IMG/VR virus record: IMGVR_UViG_3300031963_000004
Location: 124,001-188,000 of that record
Strand: one strand, 5' to 3'
Length of the DNA: 64,000 nt
The notes beneath the pieces are model-generated. The model was not told where the DNA came from, searched no databases, and worked only from the letters and a program-made list of their open reading frames with translations. Both the position numbers and the translations under genes were made by a program. Below, piece by piece: positions 2,106 to 64,000 of the stretch (positions are counted from its first letter, which is position 1; the number at the start of each line of letters is the position of its first letter).

Positions 2106-2400
2106 TTTTTACGTTCCAAAAATAAGTTTCACCTGTGTAGTTTTCATTAGCTATAATAGTAATATCTTCTACAGGACATTTAGTGCCAGTTGTATCTTTT
2201 GCTAGTTTAAAAATTGTGCTAGTATACTTAATTGGTTCTATTTTACCATCTACAACCTGAACATCAAATCTACCCTCAGCATATGTCATGGCATCTATGA
2301 CCAAATAATCGCCCTCATGCATGTCGCAAGAATAGAACAACACTTTACCAAAAGTGTCATAATATAACTTAAATTCAGGTTCGTTCATAGGCTTGTTCAA
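2098..2400 (-). CDS. Hypothetical protein
   Basis: 100-aa ORF overlapping both neighbours in the operon. Confidence 0.7.
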   Translation of the reverse strand: MNKPMNEPEFKLYYDTFGKVLFYSCDMHEGDYLVIDAMTYAEGRFDVQVVDGKIEPIKYTSTIFKLAKDTTGTKCPVEDITIIANENYTGETYFWNVKNV

Positions 2401-30698: not shown

Positions 30699-33350
30699 TT
30701 AAAAATAACTTCTGCTCTTAATCCAATCCATGTCCTTAGATGATTGACTATTATCATCATCAATGGCTTGATTGGGTTTTGGGTTTGTGGGACTTCTGAT
30801 GGCACCTACAATGCTAGCATTTGTTCGTTGATTAAATTGATTAGCTGCTATTATACCGGCTGGATCAGGACCTTGTCGTGCAGTTGCTACTTGCGGCATA
30901 CCAGTTGGTTGTTTACCTTGATAAGTTGTTGGGGAGGCTGCTTCAGCAGACGAACGCTGTGCTTCCCCATAACTTACTGATTGTGCGTACCCGCCTGGAT
31001 TAGTTGGTCCTGAATAGTAACTACTACTAGTATTATTAACAGAAGTTTGACTAGCGGTTGTATTACTTGATTTAGTTGCACTTGCACCATTATTCCATGG
31101 TGGGCTCCACAATATTAAATTTAAATCTTGTGTAAATCTGCCTCTACTAAAAGTTGATGTTACATCTACCACCATATAAGAAATTGCACCGTTCAAAACT
31201 TTTTCAAGTTCAGGGGGGTATTTATAAACTTCAATATTTTCACTTGGAGTCATTAATCCAGTATTGTTATCATAATCAATTGCTTCATTAAATTTAATTT
31301 CAATAAACACTTGACCATCATGTGCGTCTACACTATTATCTGGTCCATATCGCTTTGGATACAAATCATATCGCATACCTGAAGTGGCTATTAAGAAATC
31401 TGGATCGCCCAATATTGAAATTTTTGCCGAAGCCTTATCACCGGGGCTATACAAACTAGTTCTAATACTTGCTGCTGCTTGACCTGCTTTACCAAATGCT
31501 CCGGAGTCTGACTCATTCTGTTTGGTCATCATATTAACTTCAACAGGAGGACTTGTATTGGGCGGAGATTGTTGTAAACTGTTCATGTAATACAAGGCAT
31601 TATAACTTTGTTCATAACTTAAAATTTCATTATTAAGACCTGTATAGATATAGTTATACCTTTTATGTGGACCGGGGTAAGAACTTGTTTTGTTAATGAA
31701 TGCTGAACGTAGATATGGTATTTTATAATTATTAATTAAGTAGGTCGTGTCATAGACATGACCCTTTCTTATGTTATCGTATCCGGTACGCTTCACTACC
31801 GGAGTCACAGTAAACCACATAAACTCTTTTTTCTCACCACCGCCTGCACTTTCATCAATGTCTGGTTCTGGATCTTCCTTGTACTGTTTGTTAAGTGCCT
31901 CTCTTACATAACTACTTTGTCCTATTATGGTATCTATAGCTTGTGCTATAGTGGTTCCAGAGTCAATACCAAATGTTCTATTTTTTCTATCGAAACTTGC
32001 AGTGGCTATTTGACTATTTTTATCATTCGATTCACTTGTTTTTTTAATGTTTGTTGATGTATTGGCTTTATAGTTTTTAATTTCATTATCAGTTTCATCA
32101 ACTAATAACGAACTTTTTATTGATCCGTTATCTATAAATTTAATTTGATAAGTGTTTTTTAATTCTGCTGCTTGAATTTTGTTAGTGCCACCTGTAATCA
32201 AATCATCTTCAAATTTGTTCAGTGATGTGATAAGACTATCTGTAGGATGCGTTGATAAAATTTCTTCAACTGTTTTACCACAAAGGGTAAGTTGATTTTT
32301 AATTATTCCCCTTTTAGTTCCGAATCCTGCCTGTACTGACGTATTTTGTGCTTTAATACTATAAGTAGTTGCTTTGCCGTCTAATTTGAATGATATACCT
32401 GTTAGTGTTAGGGGAAAATATCTTGGGAACAAACTGAATTGATCTGTCCCTCCACCTTTAACTGGATTGCCTTCACTGTCATATCCATAAAATTTGATAC
32501 CCAATATATACAATTGTTGCATATGATGGTTTGCCATATTCCCATTTGGAATTTTTTCTTGTGATGATACTCTAAGTGCAGCAGTTTTAAGTTCACTTAA
32601 AAATTTAAATCCATATGGTTCATAGATTTTGAACTCAAATGCTGTACTATCAACAGTTGGGCCGTCAGTTGATTTTGTATTAACAAATGTTTTAAAATTT
32701 AAATCATCAATATAATAATCACGTTCAAATAAAGCCTTACCTCCTGAACCACTGCGGTTAGTTCCGCCCGATTCAGCAACTACATACATACCTTCTAAAG
32801 ATGTTTCACCTGTTTCTATAAAATCATTATAAATTTCACTAGTACACATATACAAACTTAAATTGTAAGTATAGCTTATCATAGTTGATAGTGGGTTGTG
32901 TAGGCGAGGACCTGTTGCTGTTGCAACACTTGATGGCGTAACCGGAGGCTTAAATGCGACATCGTTTCCTGTATTAGATACGACTGCTGATTGTGCATAT
33001 CCACCGGGATTAGTTGGTCCTGAATAATAACTGCTACTTGAATTGTTGGTAGGCACAATAGTGTCTGTGAAATTATTTGCCGATTGTGCATATCCACCGG
33101 GATTAGTTGGTCCTGAATAATAACTTGATGTGCTTATTGTGCTTGTGCCATTAGCGTTTATCTGTCTACCAAAAGCAGCGGCATTTCTATCATCAGGATT
33201 TATAGCGGTTATAGGAGTCGTAGAAGTTGTCGGAGTCGCAGGAGTCGTATTTTGTTTTGTGACGGCAGCCACAAAGTCTGCATTTGTTTTTTGATTAAAT
33301 TGATTTGCAGAAATTACACCGCCTATATTATTCAGTGTTGGGAAAGTCAT
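30699..33350 (-). CDS. Baseplate hub protein (gp27-like) with low-complexity repeat-bearing termini
   Basis: Position between gp53 and gp5; NPL....SYTY..SLY, F.I.EPYG..F, ILGDPDFL and F..G.FTQ.L motifs. Confidence 0.6.
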   Translation of the reverse strand: MTFPTLNNIGGVISANQFNQKTNADFVAAVTKQNTTPATPTTSTTPITAINPDDRNAAAFGRQINANGTSTISTSSYYSGPTNPGGYAQSANNFTDTIVPTNNSSSSYYSGPTNPGGYAQSAVVSNTGNDVAFKPPVTPSSVATATGPRLHNPLSTMISYTYNLSLYMCTSEIYNDFIETGETSLEGMYVVAESGGTNRSGSGGKALFERDYYIDDLNFKTFVNTKSTDGPTVDSTAFEFKIYEPYGFKFLSELKTAALRVSSQEKIPNGNMANHHMQQLYILGIKFYGYDSEGNPVKGGGTDQFSLFPRYFPLTLTGISFKLDGKATTYSIKAQNTSVQAGFGTKRGIIKNQLTLCGKTVEEILSTHPTDSLITSLNKFEDDLITGGTNKIQAAELKNTYQIKFIDNGSIKSSLLVDETDNEIKNYKANTSTNIKKTSESNDKNSQIATASFDRKNRTFGIDSGTTIAQAIDTIIGQSSYVREALNKQYKEDPEPDIDESAGGGEKKEFMWFTVTPVVKRTGYDNIRKGHVYDTTYLINNYKIPYLRSAFINKTSSYPGPHKRYNYIYTGLNNEILSYEQSYNALYYMNSLQQSPPNTSPPVEVNMMTKQNESDSGAFGKAGQAAASIRTSLYSPGDKASAKISILGDPDFLIATSGMRYDLYPKRYGPDNSVDAHDGQVFIEIKFNEAIDYDNNTGLMTPSENIEVYKYPPELEKVLNGAISYMVVDVTSTFSRGRFTQDLNLILWSPPWNNGASATKSSNTTASQTSVNNTSSSYYSGPTNPGGYAQSVSYGEAQRSSAEAASPTTYQGKQPTGMPQVATARQGPDPAGIIAANQFNQRTNASIVGAIRSPTNPKPNQAIDDDNSQSSKDMDWIKSRSYF
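32989..33125. repeat. Two identical 44-nt direct repeats (32989-33032 and 33082-33125) encoding SYYSGPTNPGGYAQS; third copy with synonymous changes at ~30978-31029
   Basis: gattgtgcatatccaccgggattagttggtcctgaataataact read twice directly in the sequence. Confidence 0.9.
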
Positions 33351-33351
33351 A

Positions 33352-33654
33352 TTATAGTCCTAAAATTTCTTTTATTGCAGTTGCTTGTGGCAAGTAAATT
33401 GAGGTGCCTGAAACAAAATCGAATAAAGGATCTTTTAGTTTATTAGGATTTCTAGCAGCAAAGACCCACCATAAATTTGCGTCATCATATAAGTCATATG
33501 CCAATAAATCAGGTCGTAAATTATATGTTACATTTATTGTCCAATTTATATCTTGTGGATTTTTAGGTATATACCTATTTTCCATAATATCTAAAAACTG
33601 TTTATTAACAAGTTTAGTAGTAAAATATGGACTAGTTTGTTTATATGCAGCCAT
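33352..33654 (-). CDS. gp53: Baseplate wedge protein, T4 gp53-like (LysM-like)
   Basis: RPDLLAYDLY....LWWVF..RN....DP.FDF..G..IYLP; start probably ATG 33654 (TAATG coupling). Confidence 0.85.
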   Translation of the reverse strand: MAAYKQTSPYFTTKLVNKQFLDIMENRYIPKNPQDINWTINVTYNLRPDLLAYDLYDDANLWWVFAARNPNKLKDPLFDFVSGTSIYLPQATAIKEILGL

Positions 33655-34934
33655 TACCAAATACCTTTCTTGATTAGATCACCTTTAGCATAATCTTTAA
33701 CAGAGAACTTGTTACTAGAATCATATCTACTAATCATTGGGCTTGCACCTAATTGAATAGTAAGTTTAGTCGGTACGTATGTAGCCTCTTTAGAATGTTC
33801 GTTACGAAACATAGGTCTGTCAGGTTCGGCCCCTGCAGGTATTTGTGCTGATTCTCTGCGAAGTACTTTTGATATGATCGTATTAAAAATTCCCCCTACA
33901 CCGGATCTACCTCCGCCGGCAGCAGATTTAGTTACAGGACTATATGAGCCTAAATTTTGTCCGCCAGTGTTGGCGGGCAAACTTGCTCTTATATAATCAA
34001 CATCATTTGGAAGAGAATAGGTAAAGTTAGTTATCACTAATGGATGTTTAGAAAATTGATATTGTCCGTATCCAGACAAATAGCATAATGGCGGGGGAGT
34101 CCCTTTCATGGGATCCTTATCCATACCATAAAACATTTTTGTCACTGATTTAAAGAAATGAATTACTGCAAGTAAATATCTTGCTTCATTGGTATCTTGT
34201 GCAGTAAATTCTGCTGAAATTTGTATCTCACCTACATTACTGTTTCTATATTGATAAAATTTATAATTTGTATGAGTTAAATCAACAGGATCATAACTTG
34301 CTTGATAACTTAAGTTTATTATAGGAGTATACGGGAATATAACGCCGTTAGTTTGTCTTAAAGGATATAAAACATGACTATCATCTCTTGCATCCATATA
34401 CAAATAATTTGCGTTTGGTGCTAATTGTAACCTTACTCTCCAGTCATTTTCATTGATATTAAATCCTCTAGAGGGTTGAGCAGGAGGCATTGTTGGGTTA
34501 GCGAATATACCTTTTTTAAGTGGTTCCGCACTAAATGTAGTAGGTGCGGCTCCGGTGCTATTTGTAGCTGAAGCTGCATACCCTCCTCCCGATGTAGGTC
34601 CTGAATAATAGCTTGAGCTAGTATTAAAGTTTTCAGGCTTAAAATTAGTCGCAGACTGTGCATATCCACCCATACTAGTTGGTCCCGGAGAATAACTACT
34701 AGTCACTGGTCCTGAATAGCTGATTGGTGAATCTTTAAAATTGCTAGCAGATTGTGCGTAGCCACCAATATTAGTTTGTCCTGAAAAATAACCACTGCCA
34801 CTGTTACCTACTGTTGGTTGTGGACTGTTATTCCTAGTGATAGCAGCTACTACACTTGCGTTGGTATTTTGATTGAATTGATTAGCTGCAATTATACCAG
34901 CTGCGTCCGGAACTGTTGGGGTTGGGAATGCCAT
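33654..34934 (-). CDS. Baseplate tail-tube initiator/cap, gp48/gp54-like, with repeat-bearing N-terminal extension
   Basis: DWRVRL, GVIFPYTP, H.NY....Y.NS, FTAQ...EA.YLLA..HF.KSVTKMFYG and PPP...LSGYG; position beside gp53. Confidence 0.65.
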   Translation of the reverse strand: MAFPTPTVPDAAGIIAANQFNQNTNASVVAAITRNNSPQPTVGNSGSGYFSGQTNIGGYAQSASNFKDSPISYSGPVTSSYSPGPTSMGGYAQSATNFKPENFNTSSSYYSGPTSGGGYAASATNSTGAAPTTFSAEPLKKGIFANPTMPPAQPSRGFNINENDWRVRLQLAPNANYLYMDARDDSHVLYPLRQTNGVIFPYTPIINLSYQASYDPVDLTHTNYKFYQYRNSNVGEIQISAEFTAQDTNEARYLLAVIHFFKSVTKMFYGMDKDPMKGTPPPLCYLSGYGQYQFSKHPLVITNFTYSLPNDVDYIRASLPANTGGQNLGSYSPVTKSAAGGGRSGVGGIFNTIISKVLRRESAQIPAGAEPDRPMFRNEHSKEATYVPTKLTIQLGASPMISRYDSSNKFSVKDYAKGDLIKKGIW

Positions 34935-53277: not shown

Positions 53278-53311
53278 TCTTTTATTCTCAATCGGGATGG
53301 GAAGAACAAGG

Positions 53312-53335
53312 AAGCGCACTTCGGTGCGCTTTTTT
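53312..53335 (+). terminator. Rho-independent terminator after the major capsid gene
   Basis: AAGCGCAC-TTCG-GTGCGCTT followed by a T run (cUUCGg tetraloop). Confidence 0.9.
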
Positions 53336-53368
53336 GTTATGTTGCGTAACATATAAAGCCAAAATAGA

Positions 53369-53409: not shown

Positions 53410-54093
53410 ATGGCAGCAGAACCATTTAACTCAGCAGGCGGTTATACATATGGTATACCTCCTCAACCACTCATAACATCAAACGGTAATCTTAGTGCAA
53501 TAAACGCAACCTTTGCAAATGTTAACGTGTCTGGTAATCTTATCACTAGTGGAACAATAAGTGCGGATAATTTTATTGGAAACGTTCAAGGAAATATTAC
53601 TGGTGATTTTGCAGTTGTGGGTCCGGACAAAGGTATTGTATATAATAAAGCTGGGATAATTTTTTCAGACGATAATTTTAAGTTTGACTATGCAAATGCT
53701 ACTTTAAATTTAAATGGTAATCTAGTAACAAATAGTATTACGTTGGGGGTAGGACCTCTTGAATTTAGCAAAGCCATAGTGTTTAACGCAACAACAAACA
53801 GTAGCACACCAGAACAGCCCCTACATACAATAGCTGCTAACACAGTATCTTCAATTGACTATGTTGTTGTTGCAACTGATGCAACTGCTAACACAAGACA
53901 AACTAGTAAATTAATTGCAGGTGTTTTAGGTGACACCGTTGAGTATTTTGAATACGGTACAATTGATATAAACGGTGGAGTATGCGATGTTAGAATCAAA
54001 AACGAAACAGGTAACGTCATACTGACTGTAAGCCCAATGACTTCTAATCAGATCACCTATAAGATTATGGTGACTACAGTTAAAGAAGGATAA
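53410..54093 (+). CDS. Virion fibre/decoration protein
   Basis: N-terminal FNSAGGY, Asn-rich beta repeats, and a C-terminal domain resembling those of 54103.. and 61583.. Confidence 0.6.
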   Translation: MAAEPFNSAGGYTYGIPPQPLITSNGNLSAINATFANVNVSGNLITSGTISADNFIGNVQGNITGDFAVVGPDKGIVYNKAGIIFSDDNFKFDYANATLNLNGNLVTNSITLGVGPLEFSKAIVFNATTNSSTPEQPLHTIAANTVSSIDYVVVATDATANTRQTSKLIAGVLGDTVEYFEYGTIDINGGVCDVRIKNETGNVILTVSPMTSNQITYKIMVTTVKEG

Positions 54094-54102
54094 CAAAAAG
54101 AA

Positions 54103-56394
54103 ATGTCAATTAAAGCCCTTAACTCGGTTGCAGGTTTTTCGGTAGGGGAAAATCCAACAGAAGTTATTTTAGCGAATGGCGATATTACCACAGGTAATGC
54201 TTTATTGTCAGGCAATGTTGTAACAGGTTCTATATTCACAGATGACTATCGCTATGCTAATGGAGCTCCCGTCGATTTCGCACAGCCTGCAGGAAACACA
54301 TATCAGTTACAATATAATCTTAACGGTGACTTTGGAGCCACAGATTCACTTACTTTTAATCCAATATCGAATACATTAAACGTTGCTAATGCAATTATAG
54401 CCGGAAACATAACATCAATTGGTAATGTTTCAGCACAATACTTTTTTGGCAACGTTATAGGTAATATCGCAGGTAACTTAACAGTTCCTGGAATCAATAC
54501 CTCTGTTATTTTTAATACTACTGGAACAGCAGATGCTACTGATGCGTTTACATTTAATAAAAATTTAAATGTATTAGACGTAAGAGGAACCATTCAATCA
54601 CAAAATATAAGTGCAACACAGTCTATTGCTACAGAAAATATAATAGGCACATTACAAACTCCTAATCAGCCTAATATTATACAATTAGGTAATTTAGGTA
54701 ATTTAACTGTTAACACGTTTATAAACACTGATAGTATTACAGGTAATACTGCAAATTTTGCCAACGTTAATAGCAACAATATAACCAGTAATTCAATAAC
54801 TAGTAATACAATTAATTCTGCTAATTTAAATGTTAGTCAAAATATAAGTGGTTTAAATCAAGAGTTGACTGGTAATCTATCTGTTTTAGGTAATGTAGCT
54901 GCTAATAACTATTCTGGAAATAATTTAAACATAAGCAATAACATTGCTGCGAACACCGGATCTTTTACAGGTAATCTATCAGCGGGAGAAACTTCAGTTA
55001 CAGGAAATTTAACTACTACCGGTAACGTAACTGCTGATATCATAACTGCAAATCAAATTGTTTTAACAAGTAACTTATCAGTTGGTGCATCATTATCTGC
55101 AAGCGACTTATCAGTTTCGGGTAACTTACAGGTAGGTAATTTAAGTATTACCAGTACGATAAGTTCTAATTTAATACCTAATGTTAGTAACACCTATGTC
55201 ATAGGTAATCAAGAAAATCGTTGGAGTAATTTATGGTTATCTAATGACGGTGTATATTTAGGTGATCTGCCTATCAAAAACGATAGCGATACCTTAGTTA
55301 CTAATAATATCAGATCAAATGGTAACGTAACAACAACTAATTTAAATGTCACTGGCGCAACAACTGCTACAGGTGATGTTAATATTACAGGAAATCTTAC
55401 TGTTAACGGTAATACAAAATATGTGAATGTAGACACTGTTGCTATTAAAGATCCTATAATACCAATTGGTGGTAGTACGAATGGTGCTAACGCAGAAGGG
55501 TATGACGGTAAAGATAGAGGTTTACTATTACAAAACTACACATCTGACGGAACAGCCCCAGAAAATCAGTTCTTTGGTTGGAAAACTCAGGATCAAGAAT
55601 TTATAGCAGTTTCAAATGTAGGAAGCTCACTAAACGAACTTATCATACCTAATCATTTAGGTAACATTAGAGCAAACGTTTTCAAAGGTAATATTGAGGG
55701 CAGAGTTTTAACTGGTACTCAACCTAACATTACAAGTTTAGGTAACTTGACCGGACTAAATGTTAATGGTAATTTAAATGTAACTGGTGTAGCAAATACT
55801 ACAGCATTAAGAATAGCAAATACATTATATCCAACGACACCTGGCACAGATGGTCAGGTATTAACAACAAATGGTGCTGGTTCAATATATTACACAACAC
55901 CGATTACAGACGAATTATTTAACGGTACCAGTAACGTAAAAGTCAACGAAAACAGTAATGTAACCATAAGTGTTAATGGAAACGCTAATGTACTTACAGT
56001 CACATCAAACACTGCGGAAGTTAATGGCACATTATTAGCAAATACAATATCAGGTTCTGAGTTTGTATTAGGTATTACTAAAGTTGGACACGCAACTGTT
56101 ACAACTTCATCAACTGCGCTTAATCAAGTAATCGCTAGTATACCAATAGCTGATATCAGAGGGGCAGAATTTTTCATAAAAGGTGAAGAAAATTCGGGTG
56201 CTAAATATAGCGTTGAGTCTATATCTGCCGTACACAATGGTACTTCTGTAGAATTTTCAAAATACGGAGCTGTTAATTTAGGTGGGGCAACAGGTGCATT
56301 AAGTGTTAGATTAGCAGCAGGATTTTTACAATTAATAGTTACACCAAGCAGTAGTAACTCTACTAATTGGACTACACAATATAGGACAATTTAA
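54103..56394 (+). CDS. Asn-rich virion fibre protein
   Basis: LNSVAGFSVG N-terminus, GNL/GNV beta-helix-like repeats, KDPII module and QPNITSLG. Confidence 0.65.
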   Translation: MSIKALNSVAGFSVGENPTEVILANGDITTGNALLSGNVVTGSIFTDDYRYANGAPVDFAQPAGNTYQLQYNLNGDFGATDSLTFNPISNTLNVANAIIAGNITSIGNVSAQYFFGNVIGNIAGNLTVPGINTSVIFNTTGTADATDAFTFNKNLNVLDVRGTIQSQNISATQSIATENIIGTLQTPNQPNIIQLGNLGNLTVNTFINTDSITGNTANFANVNSNNITSNSITSNTINSANLNVSQNISGLNQELTGNLSVLGNVAANNYSGNNLNISNNIAANTGSFTGNLSAGETSVTGNLTTTGNVTADIITANQIVLTSNLSVGASLSASDLSVSGNLQVGNLSITSTISSNLIPNVSNTYVIGNQENRWSNLWLSNDGVYLGDLPIKNDSDTLVTNNIRSNGNVTTTNLNVTGATTATGDVNITGNLTVNGNTKYVNVDTVAIKDPIIPIGGSTNGANAEGYDGKDRGLLLQNYTSDGTAPENQFFGWKTQDQEFIAVSNVGSSLNELIIPNHLGNIRANVFKGNIEGRVLTGTQPNITSLGNLTGLNVNGNLNVTGVANTTALRIANTLYPTTPGTDGQVLTTNGAGSIYYTTPITDELFNGTSNVKVNENSNVTISVNGNANVLTVTSNTAEVNGTLLANTISGSEFVLGITKVGHATVTTSSTALNQVIASIPIADIRGAEFFIKGEENSGAKYSVESISAVHNGTSVEFSKYGAVNLGGATGALSVRLAAGFLQLIVTPSSSNSTNWTTQYRTI

Positions 56395-56400
56395 AATTAA

Positions 56401-59400
56401 ATGGCATTAACTAAATTTAATTCAGAAGCAGGTTTTTCAGTAGGAGCATATCCTGCTATAGACGTTATTGATCGTAATGCTAATATTACGGCTAACAGCC
56501 TGCAGGCTACTGGTGCTGTTGATTTAGGTATAATCGGCAACTTAACTATTACTGGTGGTAACGCAGGTCAATATCTGCAAACTGATGGATCAGGAACATT
56601 AGTTTTTGCTAATGTTGATTTACCTTATGCAAGAGGTCCAAATCTTGCAGTACAATATAACAACACTTCTGCATTCAGCGGTGACAATAACTTTACATAC
56701 GATCCTACAACAGGTACAGTAAACGCTATCGCATTTGCGGGAGATGGTAGTAAACTTTCAGGTATAACAGGAGCAAACGTTGTTGGTGTAGTTGCAAATG
56801 CAAACTACGCAGCATTTGCAAACGTTACACTAAACTCATTAGCAGCTAACACAACTCAATTCGTTATTGGTAACAGTCAACCAAATATTACCAACGTTGG
56901 TAATTTAGAGCAGCTTAATGTTACAGGTAATCTTTTAGCAGAGGCTTTGGTAGCGAATTCATCATTACTAGTTCAAGGCGATGCAACAATTAACGGTAAT
57001 CTAGTTGTTCAAGGTACCGCAATATATTCAAACGTACAAACATTAAATGTTAAAGATCCTATACTAGAATTAGGTGGTGATCCATTTGGTGGCGCATTAG
57101 TAGCAAATGATTATATCAACCGCGGTATATTAGTTCATTACTATGATGGTATCCCCCTTAAAGGTTTTATGGGTTGGGACAGTAATGCTAATGGGTATAC
57201 TTTTGCCAGTAATATATCGCTAACTAATAATGAAGTAATCATTCATAATTTAGGTAACATTACAGCCCAAAACTTTATAGGTAACGGTGTAGGTATTACT
57301 GAGATAGAAGGCGGTAACGTTACAGGAATCGTAGCGAATGCTAACTTTGCTCAATACGGAAATTACGCAAGCTTTGCAGGAAATGTAACTGCATCAAATC
57401 AACCAAATATTACTACAGTTGGTAGTTTAGGTAATCTAACAGTTTTAGGTACAAGTAATTTAGGAAACGCTGCTGTTGCTAATTTTTTAGTAGGAGACGG
57501 CGGTTATCTATCAAATATTAAAGGACCTAATGTTGTAGGCACAGTTGCAAATGCTAACTATGCTCTTTATACAAACTACGCTAATACAGCAGAAACAGTA
57601 ACAATAGGGGCACAGCCAAATATTACAAGTGTTGGCACATTAACAGGATTAAATGTTGATGGTATAATAACTGGTGATGAAGCAACCTTTGTTGATGACG
57701 TAACAGCAGCATATTTTATAGGTGATGGTTATCAACTATCAAACATCACAGGTGCTAATGTTACTGGCACGGTAGCAAATGCATCAAATGCTAATTCATC
57801 TCATTACGCTACACATGTATTAGGTGCAGAACAACCAAATATTACAAGCGTTGGCACATTAACAAGTTTAGCAGTCACAGGTAATATTTCAGGTAATGTA
57901 ATTACTGGTAATTTATTTGTAGGTAACGGATCACACTTATCTAATATAACAGGCGCGAACGTAAGCGAAGTTCCAAATGCTAACTTTGCTACCTATTCAG
58001 GTCAGGCTAACAACGCAAACTTTGCAGGAAATGTCACAGTAGCAGATCAACCTAATATTACAAGTTTAGGTACATTAGTAAGATTAGACATAACAGGTAA
58101 CCTAACAGCAGGTAATGCTAATTTAGGTAACATGGTTAAGGCTAACTTTATAGACGCAAATGGTTATTTCTTAACATATACAGCAGGGCCAAATGTTGTC
58201 GGTTTAGTTGCCAACGCTAATCACTCATGGCATTCAAATGCTGCTAACTTTGCTAATTTAGCCAGTTTTGCAAATACAGTTGTATTCGCTAATCAACCTA
58301 ATATTACAAGTGTTGGTACACTAACTAATCTATCCGTATCCGGTAATATTATATCCGGTAATGCTAGCCTAGGTAATTTTGTACAAGCTAATTTTTTCTC
58401 AGGCAATGGTTATTATCTAACAGATTTACAGGCAGCTAATATAGTAGGTACTGTAGCAAACGCCAACTACGCAAATTTTGCAGGCAATGCTACACAAGCA
58501 AATCACGCTAATACAGCAAATACAGTTACCAATGCAGCACAACCTAATATTACAAGTGTTGGCACATTAACTTCACTAACAGTATCAGGGAATGTTTCAG
58601 CACAAAATGCTAATTTAGGTAATATTGCTGTAGCAAACTTCTTTGTTGGTGACGGAAGTAATCTATCTTTAATAAATGGTGCGAACGTAAGTGAAGTACC
58701 TAACGCTAATTTTGCAAGCTATTCTGAGCAAGCTAATAATGCTAATTATGCTACATCAGCGGTAACTGCGGGTACTGTAACAACAGCAGCACAGCCAAAT
58801 ATTACATCGGTCGGCACATTAACTGATTTAACCGTAACTGGTAATATAACAACAGGTAATCTAGTAAGCTTGCTTGATGTTACAGCAGTAAACTATTTTG
58901 GTAATGCGTATAATTTATTTGATATAAATGGTGCAAATGTAAGTGAAGTTCCGAATGCTAACTTTGCTACTTACTCAGGTCAAGCAGACAATGCAAACAC
59001 TGCGGTTAAAGTTACATCAAGCAGTCAACCTAATATTACTAGCGTAGGTTCACTTGTTGACCTAGATGTTATTGGAAACATTTCTGTAGGTAATATTAAT
59101 GATGCAGAAACAATAACAGCAACATTCTTTGTCGGTAGTGGCGCAAGTTTAAGTGATATCAACGGAGCAAACGTAAGCGAAGTAGCAAATGCAAATTACG
59201 CTACGTATTCAGGTCAAGCAGATAACGCAAATACTGCCGGAACAATAACAGCAAGTAGTCAACCTAATATTACCAGTGTCGGCACGTTAACTAGCTTATC
59301 GGTAACAGGTAATGTTAGTGCAGGAAATGTATTAGGTGGTAACGCAGTAAGTGCTAATTATTTTGTCGGTAACGGAGCATTTTTAACAGGTGTTATTACA

Positions 59401-61581
59401 GGAATTGATGATACTATTGCAAATGGTAATAGTAACATAACAATATTTGAAACAAGCGTAGGACTTTCAGCTAACGGCGTAGCGAATGTAATGCTCATCG
59501 GTAAAGATACCGTTGACGTAATTGGATCAATAACAGCCACTGGTGATATAACAGTAGACAATGTTATTTCAAATCTAATCACAGGTACATTAACAACTTC
59601 TGCGCAACCAAACATTACTACTGTAGGTACACTAGATGAATTAACTGTAGACGGTAATGTAACAGCAAATTACTTTATAGGTAATGTAGTTGGTAATATA
59701 CAAGGTACATTACAAGCACCTGGTGGCAATACACAAATACCATTTAATCAAAATGGTAATTTAGGTGCGACAGATAAACTTCAGTTCAATTACGCTACAA
59801 ACACATTATCTGTAATAGGAAACATATCCACATCTAATAATCTTACTAGAGATAGCAAGGTCGTTACTACATTCGTATCACAACCAACTGCCCCTACTAA
59901 TGCTAAAATGGGTGATCAGTGGTATGACACTGATAACGATGTCATTTACCAGTACATATATAATGGCACAACATTTGCATGGATTGATATTAGCTCTGGC
60001 TTCACAAGTTCAGATGCGAATGCTATCCCACAAACATTAGCCTTAAGAGATGATGAAGCTAATCTAAAAGCTAATGGTTTTGTTGGTAACACAATACAAG
60101 TAACTGATGCAGTTGTTACTGGAAACTTGACAGTAAGCGGCAACATAACCTATGTAAGCACAACTAATATTGATGTAAAAGATCCTATTATAGAATTAGG
60201 CGGCGGACCTAATGGCGCAGCATTAACTCAAAATGACGGTTACGATAGAGGTAGCCTACTACATTTATATCAGGGCAGCAATACAGTTGACGCATTTATG
60301 GGTTGGGACAACTCAAATGCAGAATTTACACTAGCGAGTAACGTAACATTAGATAACAATGTAGTAACTATAAATCAGTTAGGCAATATCAGAGCGGCCT
60401 ACTTTATTGGTGATGGTAGTCAATTAGCAAACATTCCTGCATCAGCGGTTCAAGGTGGAGTTGCTAGCGTAGATGCTAATATTACTTCAATTGTACCTGG
60501 TTCAGCTATTGGAGTATCTATGGATTATTCTGATCCATTATTTCCAGCAGGTAAGTTTATGATATATCAGTTAGGACCAGTTAGTTTGACAGTTACAAAT
60601 AATTGGCAATCTAGTAGTTTGTCAAGTAAAAATGCATATGCTAATTTCTTAGCAAGCTCAATTAATACATCAAATGTTAGAATGACATTCTCATTGGCGA
60701 ACGCGGTGTTTAATGTACAAAGCACCGATACAATTACGATCGGGGGTAGTGTGGTAACAGGAGCTAATTTATTAGCAATAGGAATAACAGGAAATAGCGG
60801 TACCTATACTATTCCTAGCGACTATTTCGCAGCAAGCGTACAAACAAATGCTACTAGTACAGTCAGTGCAAACTTAACTACATCTAGAGGTGTTTATACA
60901 GGAAGTGGCACTACACTTACTACAGCACAACCTGTGGCATACAATGTTAACAGTATAACTGGTAGCTTCCCAGTAAGTTCTGTTCCTTATTGGAACTTGA
61001 ATCAATCATTCAATTGGAGCGTAAGCGTTACAGGAACGACAGCTAGCGGTAATTTAACATACAGCGGTGGCGTAGTAACTACAACTTCACTTTCTTCTAC
61101 TGGTCAAACAAGTGGAACAAGTGGAAGTATTAACAGTACTAGCAGCTATACTATTACAACAAATGATTACACAGGAGCAGGCTTGAACGGGTATGGAACT
61201 AGAACGATCCCTAATACAGTTAATGGTACAGTAAACGCAGCTACCAAATACTATCCGTTGTTCTGGAAAATTACAGCGAATAGTACATTGCCTACATTTA
61301 CTGTAACTGATAGTAGAAATAATAATAATTTTGCAATCAACCAAAGCGCAAATACAAGTACGACAGTTTCAGATTATTTATGGATGGCAGTACCTAATTC
61401 GGGAAATGCAGCCACATTACAAAGTAGAACATTTAAACACATATTTGGAGGATTCGATATTATAGATACGCCTACTGTTACAGGCACACAAACAATTTCT
61501 GCTAACGGAGAAAGCTATAATTATTCAATTTATGGTTTCTCAGGATTCAGCCAAACATCATCTATAATAGTGACATCATAA
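56401..61581 (+). CDS. Large Asn-rich repeat fibre protein (11 QPNIT[S/T/N]xG motifs)
   Basis: Mostly ~70-85-aa repeats QPNITSVGTL...GN...ANFFVGDGS.LS.I.GANV; duplicated VKDPI.ELGG...FMGWD module. Confidence 0.75.
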   Translation: MALTKFNSEAGFSVGAYPAIDVIDRNANITANSLQATGAVDLGIIGNLTITGGNAGQYLQTDGSGTLVFANVDLPYARGPNLAVQYNNTSAFSGDNNFTYDPTTGTVNAIAFAGDGSKLSGITGANVVGVVANANYAAFANVTLNSLAANTTQFVIGNSQPNITNVGNLEQLNVTGNLLAEALVANSSLLVQGDATINGNLVVQGTAIYSNVQTLNVKDPILELGGDPFGGALVANDYINRGILVHYYDGIPLKGFMGWDSNANGYTFASNISLTNNEVIIHNLGNITAQNFIGNGVGITEIEGGNVTGIVANANFAQYGNYASFAGNVTASNQPNITTVGSLGNLTVLGTSNLGNAAVANFLVGDGGYLSNIKGPNVVGTVANANYALYTNYANTAETVTIGAQPNITSVGTLTGLNVDGIITGDEATFVDDVTAAYFIGDGYQLSNITGANVTGTVANASNANSSHYATHVLGAEQPNITSVGTLTSLAVTGNISGNVITGNLFVGNGSHLSNITGANVSEVPNANFATYSGQANNANFAGNVTVADQPNITSLGTLVRLDITGNLTAGNANLGNMVKANFIDANGYFLTYTAGPNVVGLVANANHSWHSNAANFANLASFANTVVFANQPNITSVGTLTNLSVSGNIISGNASLGNFVQANFFSGNGYYLTDLQAANIVGTVANANYANFAGNATQANHANTANTVTNAAQPNITSVGTLTSLTVSGNVSAQNANLGNIAVANFFVGDGSNLSLINGANVSEVPNANFASYSEQANNANYATSAVTAGTVTTAAQPNITSVGTLTDLTVTGNITTGNLVSLLDVTAVNYFGNAYNLFDINGANVSEVPNANFATYSGQADNANTAVKVTSSSQPNITSVGSLVDLDVIGNISVGNINDAETITATFFVGSGASLSDINGANVSEVANANYATYSGQADNANTAGTITASSQPNITSVGTLTSLSVTGNVSAGNVLGGNAVSANYFVGNGAFLTGVITGIDDTIANGNSNITIFETSVGLSANGVANVMLIGKDTVDVIGSITATGDITVDNVISNLITGTLTTSAQPNITTVGTLDELTVDGNVTANYFIGNVVGNIQGTLQAPGGNTQIPFNQNGNLGATDKLQFNYATNTLSVIGNISTSNNLTRDSKVVTTFVSQPTAPTNAKMGDQWYDTDNDVIYQYIYNGTTFAWIDISSGFTSSDANAIPQTLALRDDEANLKANGFVGNTIQVTDAVVTGNLTVSGNITYVSTTNIDVKDPIIELGGGPNGAALTQNDGYDRGSLLHLYQGSNTVDAFMGWDNSNAEFTLASNVTLDNNVVTINQLGNIRAAYFIGDGSQLANIPASAVQGGVASVDANITSIVPGSAIGVSMDYSDPLFPAGKFMIYQLGPVSLTVTNNWQSSSLSSKNAYANFLASSINTSNVRMTFSLANAVFNVQSTDTITIGGSVVTGANLLAIGITGNSGTYTIPSDYFAASVQTNATSTVSANLTTSRGVYTGSGTTLTTAQPVAYNVNSITGSFPVSSVPYWNLNQSFNWSVSVTGTTASGNLTYSGGVVTTTSLSSTGQTSGTSGSINSTSSYTITTNDYTGAGLNGYGTRTIPNTVNGTVNAATKYYPLFWKITANSTLPTFTVTDSRNNNNFAINQSANTSTTVSDYLWMAVPNSGNAATLQSRTFKHIFGGFDIIDTPTVTGTQTISANGESYNYSIYGFSGFSQTSSIIVTS

Positions 61582-61582
61582 A

Positions 61583-62644
61583 ATGGCAGCGGCAACACTT
61601 ACCTTCCCCTCAGCAACGCTACTTAAAAATGTTGTAGATCCAGTAGATTTACAGGACGCTGCTACCAAAAATTATGTTAATCAAGCACTTGGTGCTGGTG
61701 GTGCAAGCATAGGTGCTGCGGGCAGTAATACACAAATACAATTCAATAATGCAGGTACATTAGGAGCAAGTGCTAACCTAACATTTGATGGTAATTTACT
61801 AACAATTACAGGTAATATAAGTTCACTAAATGCTAATTTAGGAAACTTAACTATCAGTAATTACTTTAGAGGCGTATTCGATGCTCAATCATCAAGTCAG
61901 CCCAACATTACCAGTTTAGGAACATTAACTGGATTAAATGTTGCAGGTAATGTTGATGTTGGAAACTTAAATGTTACTGGTTCTATTTCAGGTAACGTCA
62001 GTGGATCCTTTACTGGTACAGTCAGTGCTCCGGGTGCAAATACTCAAATCGTATTTAATGATGATGGCACATCCAATGCTACGTCAGGACTTACTTTTGA
62101 TAAATCTACGAATTTAATTACAGTAGCAGGAAATGCTAATGTTCAGGGTGGACTAGTTACTATTGGCGGCGCAACTATTGCAGCTAATGTTTCTACAGGT
62201 AACGCAGCTATATTCCCAATAGCTATTTCTAATTTAACAGTAGGTGCTTTAGCAGGTAATATTACTATTGGATCAACCGGTGGCACTGTAACAGCAAGAG
62301 GCACACTTGTAGCTAATACTATTGTTGGTTCTAATGTAATAAGTAATAGTTCAAACATAGCAGTTACAACAGACACCGTAGTAGACCAGTTCAATCCAGC
62401 ACTTTACAGAACCGCTAAATACTTAATCAAAGCTGGAAATGATGATGGATTCCAGTCAATTGAAGTGCTTTTGGTACACGACAATACAGACAGCTATATC
62501 ACCATATATGGTGCAGTAAGTTCTACTGAATTTGACATTGTAGACTTGTCAAGTAATATTTCAGCAGGAAACGTAAAACTGTATGCGACCGGAAGCAACG
62601 CTAACACTGTGGTAAACATACTAAGCACATACGTTAAAGATTAA
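61583..62644 (+). CDS. Virion fibre protein
   Basis: DP...QDAATKNYV, G.NTQIQFN, QPNITSLG and the C-terminal YRTAKYLI...EVLLVHD domain. Confidence 0.65.
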   Translation: MAAATLTFPSATLLKNVVDPVDLQDAATKNYVNQALGAGGASIGAAGSNTQIQFNNAGTLGASANLTFDGNLLTITGNISSLNANLGNLTISNYFRGVFDAQSSSQPNITSLGTLTGLNVAGNVDVGNLNVTGSISGNVSGSFTGTVSAPGANTQIVFNDDGTSNATSGLTFDKSTNLITVAGNANVQGGLVTIGGATIAANVSTGNAAIFPIAISNLTVGALAGNITIGSTGGTVTARGTLVANTIVGSNVISNSSNIAVTTDTVVDQFNPALYRTAKYLIKAGNDDGFQSIEVLLVHDNTDSYITIYGAVSSTEFDIVDLSSNISAGNVKLYATGSNANTVVNILSTYVKD

Positions 62645-62646
62645 CA

Positions 62647-63459
62647 ATGACAACTAAGAATTTTAATGTAAAAAAGGGAATAACTACCGGTAACGTTAGG
62701 TTAGACGCCAACACTGGTAACATTGTAGGATCAAACGTAAATGCATCAAGTTTAGTTACAACATTAGACCTAGAAGTAACAGGGAATCTTAGATCAAATC
62801 TACGCCCAAACGCTAATGGTGTATTATCTTTGGGCAACTCTAGTGCAAGATATAAAGACCTGTATCTTTCAAACGTAGTTTATATAAACGATCAAAGTAT
62901 TAGTGCAAATGCCACTACAACGACAATATCTGGTAACCTACAATTAACAGATGCAAATATTGGAAATGTCGCAGTAGCAAATGCTAACATAGCATATCTT
63001 GAAACCGCAAATATTGTCGGAAATATTGCAAGCTTTAGCAACGTCACAATAGTAACTTTTGCTGCGAATCAAGCTAATGTTAATATATTAGCAGCTAACG
63101 TGATTACCGCAAATACAGGAAATATCACAAATCTGAATGTTTCTAATACAATTGTAGCAAACAAAATTGAAGTTGATTTGGTTGAGGGCAATATATTCCG
63201 CGCAAATTCTGCGAATATAAAGACCATAATTAGTGATCAAATCACGGTAAATAATCAGATTATCATAAATAGTACTACACAAGCTACCTCAACGACCACG
63301 GGAAGTTTCGTAACGGCGGGTGGTGCAGCAATTGGTAAAGATTTATATGTTGGTGGTTCCATACATTTAGCTAACGGAAACGGTGGCACAACAAGTAAGG
63401 GAATCATCAATTATAACGATGGAGTCAATAGCATTGACTTTGGATTTAACAACACTTAA
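62647..63459 (+). CDS. Asn-rich virion fibre protein
   Basis: KNFNVKKG N-terminus, LG.SSARYKDLY and ATSTTTGS....GG..IGKDLYVGG motif. Confidence 0.6.
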   Translation: MTTKNFNVKKGITTGNVRLDANTGNIVGSNVNASSLVTTLDLEVTGNLRSNLRPNANGVLSLGNSSARYKDLYLSNVVYINDQSISANATTTTISGNLQLTDANIGNVAVANANIAYLETANIVGNIASFSNVTIVTFAANQANVNILAANVITANTGNITNLNVSNTIVANKIEVDLVEGNIFRANSANIKTIISDQITVNNQIIINSTTQATSTTTGSFVTAGGAAIGKDLYVGGSIHLANGNGGTTSKGIINYNDGVNSIDFGFNNT

Positions 63460-63472
63460 TGGATAGACAAAT

Positions 63473-64000
63473 ATGCCTACAGTAGGAGCAAGACTAAAAA
63501 ATGACGGAACTCTGCTTACAGCAGGGGAGTTTGAGGAAAATGGCATCAGCGGTGTTTCCCAAAGAGCATCTGGTCACGGAATAACCGTTGCAAATGTTTT
63601 TGCAGATGAGTTTGACGAAATTACACTTGGTGAAGGTGAACCTTCCGGTGGTTCAATAAAGCTCAATGGAACAACACAAAAAATAGACATTGCAGGTTCT
63701 GGAGATCTTCAGTTCGGCACCGGAGACTTTTGTGTAGAAGGTTGGTTCTATCTAAGATCAACTGGATATACAAGACTTTGGTGTTTTCCTGACGGAGACA
63801 ATGTTGAAGTAAACGGGACTAATGTATACTATTGGAACGGCGGCGGTAGTGTTGTAGCAAGTGGCAACAACACTGTACAACCATTTTCATGGTTCCACAT
63901 TGCATTAGTTAAAAGTAGCGGAACCGTTACAGTTTACGTAAATGGTGTTTCAAAAATTACAGACAACAGCCCATTTAATTCACAGACATCACGTGCATTG
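63473..64000 (+). CDS. Virion protein with LamG/ConA-like lectin domain (partial, runs off right edge; not in ORF track)
   Basis: MPTVGARLKNDGTL...FDE...FGTGDFCVEGWFY...WFHIALVKSSGTVTVYVNGV. Confidence 0.75.
   Translation, partial: MPTVGARLKNDGTLLTAGEFEENGISGVSQRASGHGITVANVFADEFDEITLGEGEPSGGSIKLNGTTQKIDIAGSGDLQFGTGDFCVEGWFYLRSTGYTRLWCFPDGDNVEVNGTNVYYWNGGGSVVASGNNTVQPFSWFHIALVKSSGTVTVYVNGVSKITDNSPFNSQTSRAL

What the first reader, a model, noticed from the sequence alone, without database searches (positions are those of the whole stretch)
53410..63459. Array of Asn-rich fibre proteins after the capsid gene, dense in N-x-S/T and resembling chlorovirus glycoprotein repeats
Seen: five consecutive proteins are built from shared modules, namely QPNITS(V/L)G (11 copies in the 1726-aa protein, also present in the 763- and 353-aa proteins), (Y/F)F(I/V)G(D/N)GS.L, KDPI..GG...D..RG...FMGWD and G.NTQI.FN. 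Asn is very often in N-x-S/T context; I count about 13 in one ~180-aa stretch of the 763-aa protein. From memory, the FxGNGSxL repeat resembles chlorovirus Vp260-like glycoprotein repeats. Inference: long head/neck fibres that could be the substrates of the phage GT cluster, forming a glycan coat. Caveat: Asn ladders in trimeric beta-helices and N/S/T-rich composition can produce such sequons by themselves.
Basis: partly seen in the sequence, partly recalled or inferred. Interest (0 to 1): 0.6.

Follow-up and report, generated by a model that had tools for sequence, protein, structure and literature searches.

The report
Plug-and-socket tail fibres, jumbo phage
The five Asn-rich genes after the capsid gene are modular fibre proteins of an uncultured freshwater jumbo phage that probably join head-to-tail through a T4 gp9-like socket, and their many N-x-S/T motifs come from beta-strand repeat composition, with no evidence of a glycan coat.

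Summary
The five ORFs and their shared modules are real. They are only the start of a family of at least 14 fibre genes in a 223-kb, about 63% complete, virus record. That record is a freshwater jumbo myophage with a T4-type head and baseplate core related to RaK2/PA5oct/CBB phages.

**Sequons.** N-x-S/T is 1.4-fold over composition. The mirror pattern S/T-x-N is also enriched, and equally so across 42 orthologues. Two thirds of sequons are N-(I/V/L)-(S/T). Sequon positions are no better conserved than mirror pairs.

**Glycosyltransferases.** No GT1, GT2, GT8, GT41 or Nucleotid_trans model matches anywhere in the record.

**Chlorovirus repeat.** The resemblance (PF06598) falls on the (Y/F)FxG(D/N)G motif but is below threshold in these five proteins. 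Chloroviruses themselves do not glycosylate at sequons.

**New observation.**
- p227, p763 and p353 end in a beta-sandwich that superposes on the C-terminal domain of T4 gp9, the long-tail-fibre socket (Z 12.8).
- p227, p763 and p1726 start with one conserved motif, FNSxxGFSVG; p270 has a divergent form. It aligns with the gp34 N-terminus.
- A 3+3 complex model docks this plug on the socket (0.94 against 0.00 in controls).

My best reading is a serially joined or branched tail-fibre apparatus. The glycan coat is not supported, though it is not excluded.

The parts
53311..53337 (+). Intrinsic terminator after the capsid gene: GC-rich hairpin with TTCG loop, then a T-run. An AT-rich spacer and GGAAG RBS precede the first fibre gene.
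   Evidence: Read directly. One search lists the same hairpin.
53410..54093 (+). p227, a short adaptor: plug (aa 1-45), one degenerate NTQ module (aa 68-110), gp9-like socket (aa 120-226).
   Evidence: Module HMMs: Nterm 7.6e-26, NTQ 1.6e-5, Cterm 1.6e-48. Socket part hits a cyanophage 'baseplate wedge subunit'. 213 clusters in 1.84 billion representatives, cassette at the extreme C-terminus.
54103..56394 (+). p763: plug (1-45), two NTQ modules (59-105, 125-170), single-chain beta-helix region (about 185-400, the densest sequon stretch), KDPI module (428-530), one QPNITS element (537-565), gp9-like socket (657-763).
   Evidence: Orthologues 41-56% identical on many 280-370-kb contigs.
56071..56391 (+). 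Socket domain of p763 (aa 657-763). The predicted interface is residues 703 and 715-736.
   Evidence: Foldseek match to T4 gp9 1qex, E 3.6e-5. Complex model 0.94 vs 0.00. Interface columns are conserved at 0.69 against 0.58 overall.
56401..61581 (+). p1726, a long shaft protein: plug (1-45), NTQ (73-120), KDPI (196-296), ten tandem units (aa 330-1026; nine of 71-84 aa, the last about 77-115 aa depending on where it is bounded), NTQ (1102-1149), KDPI (1238-1340), distal S/T-rich domain (1345-1726).
   Evidence: The distal domain equals the C-terminus of the 741-aa ORF at G000 192644-194869 (E 7e-119). No match for it in cultured phages.
56401..56535 (+). Plug of p1726 (aa 1-45). Residues 2-10 and 16-19 contact the socket in the model.
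   Evidence: Aligns with the T4 gp34 N-terminus on an F-x4-G-hydrophobic-x2-G pattern.
57388..59478 (+). Tandem repeat units of p1726: QPNITSVGTL...(Y/F)FxG(D/N)GxxL...ANANYA. There is no DNA-level tandem repeat, so the duplications are old.
   Evidence: Sub-threshold PF06598 hits fall on the FxGDG motif.
61583..62644 (+). p353: an alternative N-terminus (shared with the 564-aa ORF at G000 194870), NTQ (42-85), one QPNITS element (103-139), NTQ (145-191), gp9-like socket (251-353).
   Evidence: AF2 model has pLDDT above 90 over 260-350. VIA-align to T4 gp9 176-284: Z 12.8, rmsd 1.7 A over 98 aa.
62647..63459 (+). p270: divergent plug (MTTKNFNVKKGITTGN), N-rich beta region, and a C-terminus like that of the 1315-aa ORF at G000 188413.
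   Evidence: In relative L022 the same N-terminus heads a 1046-aa fibre that ends in a socket.
63473..64000 (+). Start of a 299-aa Laminin_G_3 / ConA-like lectin-fold protein that runs past the window end. More fibre genes follow it.
   Evidence: PF13385, E 1.1e-9. Length. Downstream genes.

Best explanation
The five genes encode virion fibre proteins of an uncultured freshwater jumbo myophage. They open an array of at least 14 fibre genes built from a small set of shuffled cassettes:
- an N-terminal 'plug' (FNSxxGFSVG);
- a ~45-aa NTQ module;
- a ~100-aa KDPI module;
- a 72-84-aa shaft unit (QPNITSVG...FxGDG...);
- a beta-helix stretch;
- a ~105-aa C-terminal beta-sandwich 'socket'.

Proposed mechanism (inferred). 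The fibres are trimers joined head-to-tail. The plug of one protein seats coaxially on the socket trimer of the previous one, as the N-terminus of T4 gp34 seats on the C-terminal domain of gp9.

The chain would start at a gp9-like baseplate protein (262 aa, G000 90492-91280) that has the same socket. p227 and p763 have both plug and socket, so they would be adaptor or extension pieces. p1726 has a plug but no socket, so it would be a long terminal shaft with a distal, probably receptor-binding, domain. p353 has a socket and a different N-terminus, so it would offer a further joint.

The Asn/Ser/Thr richness and the many N-x-S/T follow from beta-solenoid and beta-strand motifs such as (G/A)N(I/L/V)(S/T) and QPNIT(S/T). 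They are not evidence of selection for glycosylation sites.

Shown here: the modules, the fold match, the synteny and the sequon statistics. Modelled only: the plug-socket contact. Inferred: trimer state, order of assembly and tail location.
For: Phage context. T4-type portal, protease, scaffold, capsid, gp25, gp6, gp5 and gp53 genes lie in the window. The nearest DNA relatives are RaK2/PA5oct/CBB-like jumbo phages, where tail-fibre genes follow the capsid gene.

Modules. Shared at E 1e-20 to 1e-53.

Socket.
- AF2 pLDDT above 90.
- T4 gp9 residues 176-284: Z 12.8, rmsd 1.7 A over 98 aa. KP1 baseplate chain: Z 10.7. Foldseek E 1.3e-5 and 3.6e-5.
- gp9's C-terminal domain is where long tail fibres attach coaxially (PMC3004832).
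- RaK2 tail-fibre protein gp529 also ends in a gp9-like domain that its authors propose as an attachment site (PMC10253068).
- The same socket HMM hits a 262-aa protein (E 3.9e-8). Its N-terminus matches gp9/10_N weakly and matches annotated baseplate proteins.

Plug-socket model. Score 0.94 in three runs, best of 3 controls 0.00, 143-148 contacts, partner pLDDT 89, runs agreeing in at least 97% of contacts. The mark was reached by 51 of 78 solved complexes and 2 of 108 mismatched pairs. The interface falls on the best-conserved columns.

Topology. Among 240 homologues, 149 have plug plus socket, 70 have the socket with another N-terminus and 13 have the plug only. The socket sits at the extreme C-terminus in 219 of 220. 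Gene order capsid, ~230 aa, ~780 aa, giant plug-bearing fibre is conserved in relatives about 50% identical at p763. The plug aligns with the T4 gp34 N-terminus.

Sequons..
Against: - No virion, no proteomics and no cultured relative carry these proteins, so tail versus head location is inferred.
- The gp9 relation is structural only. No sequence or profile match to any PDB chain was found.
- The same fold is a distal, non-joining C-terminal domain in Acinetobacter tailspikes and in Kp9 gp42.
- The complex job (3+3 chains, no alignments) is unlike the tool's calibration, and a pass does not tell which family member binds. Only one pair could be tested.
- The gp34 similarity is a short motif with no statistical weight.
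- Fibre shafts were modelled as monomers with mean pLDDT 67-73, so trimer state and Asn orientation are untested.
- Over all 14 paralogues the forward sequon (1.40x) still exceeds its mirror (1.17x). This is only partly explained by about 50 QPNIT copies.
Confidence: 0.55

Rival explanations
1. Independent fibres. Each protein is a separate trimeric fibre. All are anchored through the same N-terminal plug to one baseplate socket (the gp9-like 262-aa protein). The gp9-like C-terminal domains are distal knobs for folding, trimerisation or receptor binding, not joints.
For: The same fold is the distal C-terminal domain of Acinetobacter phage tailspikes (Z 8-10) and of Kp9 gp42. The complex test cannot say which socket a plug uses. 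The baseplate-type 262-aa protein has the socket.
Against: The p763 socket and its predicted interface are strongly conserved across 42 orthologues, which is unusual for a receptor-binding tip. Plug plus socket in one chain is the commonest architecture, 149 of 240. The tested pair was a fibre socket, not the baseplate one, and it scored 0.94.
Confidence: 0.25
2. Head or neck fibres without glycans. The genes right after the capsid gene encode capsid decoration fibres or collar whiskers.
For: They lie directly downstream of the capsid gene, with only a terminator between. The related phage CBB is described as having whisker-like structures along its tail (abstract listed).
Against: The fold and motif links all point to the baseplate-fibre joint: gp9, gp34 and RaK2 gp529. 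Relatives carry tail-fibre genes at this position. No Hoc, Soc, fibritin or Ig-like decoration families were found.
Confidence: 0.1
3. The fibres are N-glycosylated at their many N-x-S/T sites by phage-encoded enzymes and form a glycan coat.
For: - 131 sequons in 3339 aa, 1.4x composition.
- The beta-helix stretch is of the generic kind found in HMW1 and TibA adhesins. HMW1 is N-glycosylated at sequons by the cytoplasmic enzyme HMW1C (abstracts listed).
- ORF 3175-3975 resembles sugar-nucleotide transferases by language-model features (0.96, lead only). It sits beside a NodU-like carbamoyltransferase and two radical-SAM genes.
- The PF06598 likeness.
- The record is only about 63% complete.
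Against: - No GT41, GT2, GT1, GT2_3, GT8 or Nucleotid_trans HMM match in 223 kb.
- The enrichment is mirrored in S/T-x-N and is dominated by N-(I/V/L)-(S/T).
- Sequons are no better conserved than mirror pairs; only 1 of 35 is kept in 80% or more of orthologues.
- Chlorovirus glycans are not on sequons, and the role of Vp260 is unknown.
- The virion glycosylation described for phages in the text I read (citation of Freeman et al. 2023 in PMC12619734) is on the C-termini of mycobacteriophage capsid and tail-tube subunits. That it is O-linked is from my own knowledge.
Confidence: 0.08

Closest known systems
T4 gp9 (long-tail-fibre socket) with the gp34 N-terminus
   Same: The C-terminal domains of p227, p763 and p353 have the fold of gp9 residues 176-284 (Z 12.8, rmsd 1.7 A). 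In T4 the fibre attaches coaxially to that domain. The plug motif aligns with the gp34 N-terminus. A model docks the plug on the socket.
   Different: Here the socket sits at the end of fibre proteins themselves, three in this locus. It often shares a chain with a plug, so joints could be serial. There is no detectable sequence similarity to gp9. T4 joins its fibre segments (gp34-35-36-37) by other interfaces.
RaK2 / phiK64-1 (Alcyoneusvirus) branched long tail fibres
   Same: Both are jumbo myophages of the same broad head-gene clade. Both have many tail-fibre genes. RaK2 gp529 ends in a gp9-like domain that is proposed as an attachment site.
   Different: RaK2 fibres are mostly depolymerase tailspikes assembled through conserved N-terminal domains. 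Here no depolymerase family is detected, the proteins are Asn-rich shafts, and the recurring joint is plug-to-C-terminal-socket.
Chlorovirus glycoprotein repeat (Pfam PF06598; PBCV-1 Vp260/A122R)
   Same: The (Y/F)FxG(D/N)GxxL...V motif of the shaft unit aligns with profile positions 1-~20. One paralogue reaches the cut-off.
   Different: Sub-threshold in all five proteins. The motif occurs once per 72-84-aa unit, not as 34-aa tandem repeats. The family name describes the protein it was found in, not a glycosylation site. Chlorovirus glycans are not on sequons.
T4-like cyanophage 'structural / tail fiber-like' proteins (Syn33, S-RIM12, P-SSM3, S-SM2, S-SRM01)
   Same: The KDPI module (p763 428-524) and the socket (p353 234-344, p227 135-226) give weak tblastn hits to them.
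   Different: Identity is 31-49% over about 70-110 aa only. Those proteins are themselves uncharacterised.
HMW1 / NGT cytoplasmic N-glycosylation of beta-helical adhesins
   Same: An Asn-rich beta-helix with many N-x-S/T.
   Different: No GT41 enzyme in the record, and no sequon-specific enrichment or conservation.

Membership tests
Pfam PF06598 Chlorovi_GP_rpt | Match to the profile at or above the gathering score (27 bits) | tested here: not met
   The best hit in the five proteins is 19.2 bits (p1726 aa 1334); the others score 6.9-16.9. hmmscan at E<=0.1 does not list it. A 981-aa paralogue outside the window reaches 27.2 bits.
Pfam PF06598 Chlorovi_GP_rpt | The protein is a glycoprotein | not testable with these tools
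   Needs mass spectrometry. The name comes from PBCV-1 Vp260, whose role in the virion is unknown.
T4 gp9 C-terminal (socket) domain | Eight-stranded antiparallel beta-sandwich fold | tested here: met
   1qex_A residues 176-284: Z 12.8, rmsd 1.7 A over 98 aa for p353. Foldseek E 3.6e-5 for p763. p227 is linked by HMM (E 1.6e-48).
T4 gp9 C-terminal (socket) domain | Detectable sequence homology to gp9 / Pfam T4_gp9_10 | tested here: not met
   No PDB sequence or profile hit. PF07880 appears only at E 0.024, on the N-terminus of the separate 262-aa protein.
T4 gp9 C-terminal (socket) domain | Coaxial binding of a fibre N-terminus to the trimer | tested here: inconclusive
   Model only: score 0.94 against best control 0.00. 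The mark was reached by 51 of 78 solved complexes and 2 of 108 mismatched pairs. The job format is unlike the calibration.
T4 gp9 C-terminal (socket) domain | Located at the baseplate periphery | not testable with these tools
   No virion structure is available.
Substrates of a cytoplasmic N-glycosyltransferase (HMW1C/NGT type) | A cognate GT41 enzyme is encoded | tested here: not met
   PF13844 has no match in the 223-kb record. The record is about 63% complete, and the host is unknown.
Substrates of a cytoplasmic N-glycosyltransferase (HMW1C/NGT type) | Sequons enriched or conserved beyond what composition and structure give | tested here: not met
   +2 is 1.38x and -2 is 1.21x. Orthologues have 30.8 sequons against 30.4 mirror pairs, kept in 31% against 28%. 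A residual forward excess remains over the whole family, 1.40x against 1.17x.
RaK2-type branched tail-fibre apparatus | An array of many tail-fibre genes with conserved joining domains | tested here: met
   At least 14 paralogues. Four plugs and four sockets in the partial record.
RaK2-type branched tail-fibre apparatus | Depolymerase (tailspike) catalytic domains | tested here: not met
   No pectate-lyase or other depolymerase family in Pfam or PHROGs for the five proteins or four paralogues. The beta-helix of p763 gives only generic solenoid matches.

The most novel reading that the evidence does not exclude
The plugs and sockets are promiscuous joints. At least four plugs (p227, p763, p1726, p270) could enter at least four sockets (the gp9-like baseplate protein, p227, p763, p353). 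Proteins with both ends (p227, p763) could also self-concatenate. One freshwater jumbo-phage lineage would then build fibres of variable length, or a branched combinatorial network, from a 'Lego' set of 14 or more genes.
Probability: 0.15. Interest if true: 0.7.

Novelty: new variant of a known kind. Interest (0 to 1): 0.4.

Why it matters
The glycan-coat idea is not supported. Dense N-x-S/T in Asn-rich beta-solenoid fibres should not be read as a glycosylation signal unless it survives a mirror-pattern control.

What remains is useful in its own right. A widespread, entirely unannotated protein family turns out to be modular phage fibre proteins with a recognisable joining rule. The searches found about 730-940 homologues in the 5.8-billion-protein set, and 213 clusters for the short adaptor among 1.84 billion representatives. 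Some members are mislabelled 'bactofilin'.

If the plug-socket contact is confirmed, it gives a simple way to annotate the architecture of adsorption machines in uncultured jumbo phages. It also gives a compact pair, about 20 aa on about 105 aa, for engineering fibre chimeras in laboratory phages.

Tried and rejected
- **Family libraries.** Pfam, PHROGs and NCBIfam on the five proteins gave only noise (Bactofilin, DUF4292, Peptidase_S26, all below cut-off) plus one PHROG 'tail fiber' hit on p1726.
- **PDB by sequence.** Single sequences and profiles found nothing.
- **Cultured phages.** tblastn found only short cyanophage hits, and none for the distal domain of p1726.
- **DNA tandem repeats.** None under the protein repeats.
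- **T4 late-promoter motif TATAAATA.** Depleted rather than enriched, and absent before the operon. The sigma-70 and terminator scans were at background, apart from the hairpin after the capsid gene.
- **Glycosyltransferase HMMs over the whole record.** GT2, GT1, GT2_3, GT41, Nucleotid_trans and GT8 all came back blank. Pfam at E<=5 and NCBIfam on ORFs 1173-3975 were also blank.
- **Literature.** Nothing on the chlorovirus repeat in phages. The 'moraphage' paper (PMC12619734) describes a different lineage.
- **Asn orientation.** The fold tools return no coordinates, and the shafts were modelled as monomers.
- **Complex prediction.** Only one job was allowed, so the other plug-socket pairs were not tested.

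Full report
**Context**

The window is bases 124001-188000 of a 223,151-bp IMG/VR virus record that CheckV rates about 63% complete. It encodes a T4-type structural core:
- a gp23 capsid protein (PF07068, E 7e-99), portal, prohead protease and scaffold;
- gp25-, gp6-, gp5- and gp53-like baseplate proteins;
- a late sigma factor and gp46/47-like nuclease.

At DNA level only the protease-scaffold-capsid block matches cultured phages. All of those are jumbo myophages of the RaK2/PA5oct/CBB/121Q kind, plus Vibrio phage 2.275.O.

Near-identical copies of the first two fibre genes occur in lake and freshwater metagenomes from at least 17 studies. The same protein sits on contigs up to 369,578 bp. 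This is therefore a common, uncultured freshwater jumbo phage.

**The observation**

All five ORFs exist as described. They are tightly packed on the + strand, with gaps of 1-13 nt. An intrinsic terminator at 53311-53337 and an AT-rich spacer separate them from the capsid gene.

- 11 QPNIT-type elements in p1726, and one each in p763 and p353;
- KDPI...GW once in p763 and twice in p1726;
- GxNTQIxFN in p1726 and p353.

I built HMMs from the genome's own copies and defined six cassettes:
- an N-terminal 45-aa motif, in p227, p763 and p1726;
- a ~45-aa NTQ module, present 1, 2, 2 and 2 times in p227, p763, p1726 and p353;
- a ~100-aa KDPI module;
- a shaft unit of mostly 71-84 aa, repeated ten times in p1726;
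- an N-rich beta stretch;
- a ~105-aa C-terminal domain, in p227, p763 and p353.

Two corrections are needed. First, p227 and p270 carry none of the four named motifs strictly. Second, the family is much larger than five genes: at least 14 ORFs of the record, up to 2613 aa, carry these cassettes. Nine of them lie outside the window.

**Sequons**

Against residue shuffles, N-x-S/T is enriched in p763 (35 vs 24.4, z 2.7) and p1726 (68 vs 46.9, z 3.7), but not in the other three.

The offset profile explains most of this:

| Offset of S/T from Asn | Observed / expected |
|---|---|
| +2 | 1.38x |
| -2 | 1.21x |
| +1 or -1 | 0.72x |

This is the alternation expected of beta-strands. In 86 of 131 sequons the middle residue is I, V or L (NIT, NLT, NVT, NVS). 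Asn is preceded by G or A more than twice as often as expected. The typical site is therefore (G/A)-N-hydrophobic-(S/T), a turn-to-strand motif. Twelve of the sequons are copies of the single motif QPNIT(S/T); 14 in all are preceded by proline.

Across 42 orthologues of p763, the mean counts are 30.8 sequons, 30.4 mirror S/T-x-N pairs and 22.3 expected from composition. A sequon of the window protein is kept in 31% of orthologues, a mirror pair in 28%. Only 1 of 35 sequons is kept in 80% or more. The p353 family behaves the same way.

Over all 14 paralogues a forward excess remains (1.40x against 1.17x), while the rest of the genome sits at 1.03x and 0.99x. About 50 QPNIT copies account for roughly half of that difference.

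Sequons are therefore dense, at 4 per 100 aa, because of composition and repeat structure. I see no signal of selection for them as sites. This does not exclude glycosylation.

**Glycosyltransferases**

Six Pfam GT models, searched over all six frames of the record, find nothing: GT2, GT1, GT2_3, GT41, Nucleotid_trans and GT8. Each model gave matches in some of the control genomes (2 to 14 of 14).

The left end of the window and the DNA just upstream hold the following:
- a twitch-domain radical-SAM enzyme;
- a second radical-SAM protein;
- a NodU-like carbamoyltransferase;
- three unannotated ORFs.

One of those ORFs (3175-3975) resembles nucleotide-sugar transferases, but only by language-model features. 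It could equally be a DNA-modification cluster.

**The chlorovirus repeat**

PF06598 is the only Pfam family that recognises the shaft unit. Five of its six hits in p1726 fall on the (Y/F)FxG(D/N)G motif, at 6.9-19.2 bits against a cut-off of 27. A 981-aa paralogue near the end of the record reaches 27.2 bits.

The recollection was therefore correct at motif level, but family membership fails for the five proteins. The family name says nothing about glycosylation of the repeat. Chlorovirus N-glycans sit on Asn outside N-x-S/T, and the role of Vp260 in the virion is unknown (PMC5408694).

**What the proteins look like**

With a 40-sequence alignment, AF2 models the C-terminal 100 residues of p353 at pLDDT above 90. 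p763, modelled with 42 orthologues, has a confident beta region (about 230-400) and the same C-terminal domain.

The C-terminal domain matches the C-terminal domain of T4 gp9 (1qex residues 176-284) at Z 12.8, rmsd 1.7 A over 98 residues. The next matches are a KP1 baseplate chain (Z 10.7) and the C-terminal domains of Acinetobacter tailspikes.

The middle of p763 is a generic single-chain beta-helix of the tapirin, TPS-adhesin and tailspike kind. That explains the 'bactofilin' labels some databases give its orthologues.

In T4, gp9 is the 'socket protein'. Its N-terminus binds gp7, and the long tail fibre attaches coaxially to its C-terminal domain (PMC3004832). RaK2 tail-fibre protein gp529 also ends in a gp9-like domain, which its authors propose as an attachment site (PMC10253068).

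The socket HMM also finds a 262-aa protein elsewhere in the record (E 3.9e-8). Its N-terminus carries the gp9/gp10 N-terminal motif and matches annotated baseplate proteins. It is the likely gp9 orthologue.

**The plug-socket hypothesis and its test**

Three proteins begin with the nearly invariant motif FNSxxGFSVG; p270 has a divergent form. This N-terminus was disordered in the monomer model.

I asked for a complex of three copies of p763 650-763 with three copies of p1726 1-60. The verdict was 'supports binding':
- score 0.94 in all three runs, best of 3 controls 0.00;
- 143-148 contacts, partner pLDDT 89, runs agreeing in at least 97% of contacts;
- the mark was reached by 51 of 78 solved complexes and 2 of 108 mismatched pairs.

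The tool adds three caveats. The format differs from its calibration. A pass may reflect likeness to solved complexes. It cannot say which family member binds.

The contacts are residues 2-10 and 16-19 of the plug, and 703 and 715-736 of the socket. These are among the best-conserved columns of the family.

Independent observations fit head-to-tail joining:
- Among 240 retrieved homologues, the socket is at the extreme C-terminus in 219 of 220. Of the 240, 149 have both plug and socket, 70 have the socket with one of several other N-termini, and 13 have the plug only.
- The order capsid, ~230 aa (plug-NTQ-socket), ~780 aa (plug...socket), giant plug-bearing fibre is conserved in relatives about 50% identical at p763. 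A third relative shows the cassettes reshuffled.
- The plug aligns with the N-terminus of T4 gp34 on F-x4-G-hydrophobic-x2-G. This is a short motif without statistical weight.

**Verdict**

The locus is best read as part of a large, modular tail-fibre apparatus whose pieces are joined by a gp9/gp34-like plug-and-socket contact. The Asn-rich, sequon-dense sequence is a by-product of the fibre folds.

The main alternative is that the gp9-like domains are only distal knobs, and each protein is a separate fibre plugged into the baseplate. Head fibres and a glycan coat are less likely but not excluded.

This is a new variant of known kinds (T4 gp9-gp34 and RaK2 branched fibres). It is moderately interesting, chiefly because it gives an annotation rule for a large unannotated family, and a specific pair to test.

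Noticed in passing
window 1-3975 (- strand) and upstream G000 116.8-124 kb (L011): A cluster holding a twitch-domain radical-SAM enzyme (NF033640, E 5e-99), a second radical-SAM protein, a NodU-like carbamoyltransferase (E 5e-42) and three unannotated ORFs. ORF 3175-3975 resembles nucleotide-sugar transferases, but only by language-model features.
   Followed up: partly
window 8253-23993 (- strand): A 5246-aa ORF next to the gp6/gp25/gp5-like baseplate genes. It carries none of the fibre cassettes and was not characterised.
   Followed up: no
window 60433-61578, and G000 192644-194869 (L012:5245-7469): The distal ~370-aa S/T-rich domain of p1726 is nearly the same as the C-terminus of a 741-aa fibre 7 kb downstream (E 7e-119). 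Two fibres therefore carry the same tip. The domain has no match in cultured phages.
   Followed up: partly
G000 90492-91280 (- strand; L019:2492-3280): A 262-aa protein with a gp9/gp10-type N-terminal motif and the same C-terminal socket. It is the probable gp9 orthologue and lies far from the baseplate cluster. The 1022-aa ORF at G000 31320-34388 starts with a similar N-terminal motif.
   Followed up: partly
L022:18842-21982 (relative from a JGI metagenome): The p270-type N-terminus heads a 1046-aa fibre that ends in a socket, and the p763 equivalent appears as a 765-aa plug-bearing protein without a socket next to a 772-aa socket-bearing protein without a plug. Cassettes are therefore shuffled between relatives.
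   Followed up: partly
window 53410-56394: DNA with 97% or more of its 31-mers identical occurs in lake and freshwater metagenomes of at least 17 studies, 2019-2025. That is unusually uniform for fibre genes. One metatranscriptome holds a small share.
   Followed up: no
window 63473-64000 and beyond: A 299-aa Laminin_G_3 (ConA-like lectin fold) protein follows the five genes. Another 35 kb of fibre-family and other large ORFs then runs to the end of the record.
   Followed up: no
orthologues of p763 in public databases: Several are named 'cytoskeletal protein CcmA (bactofilin family)' or carry PF04519 or PF03961. This is a beta-helix misannotation.
   Followed up: yes
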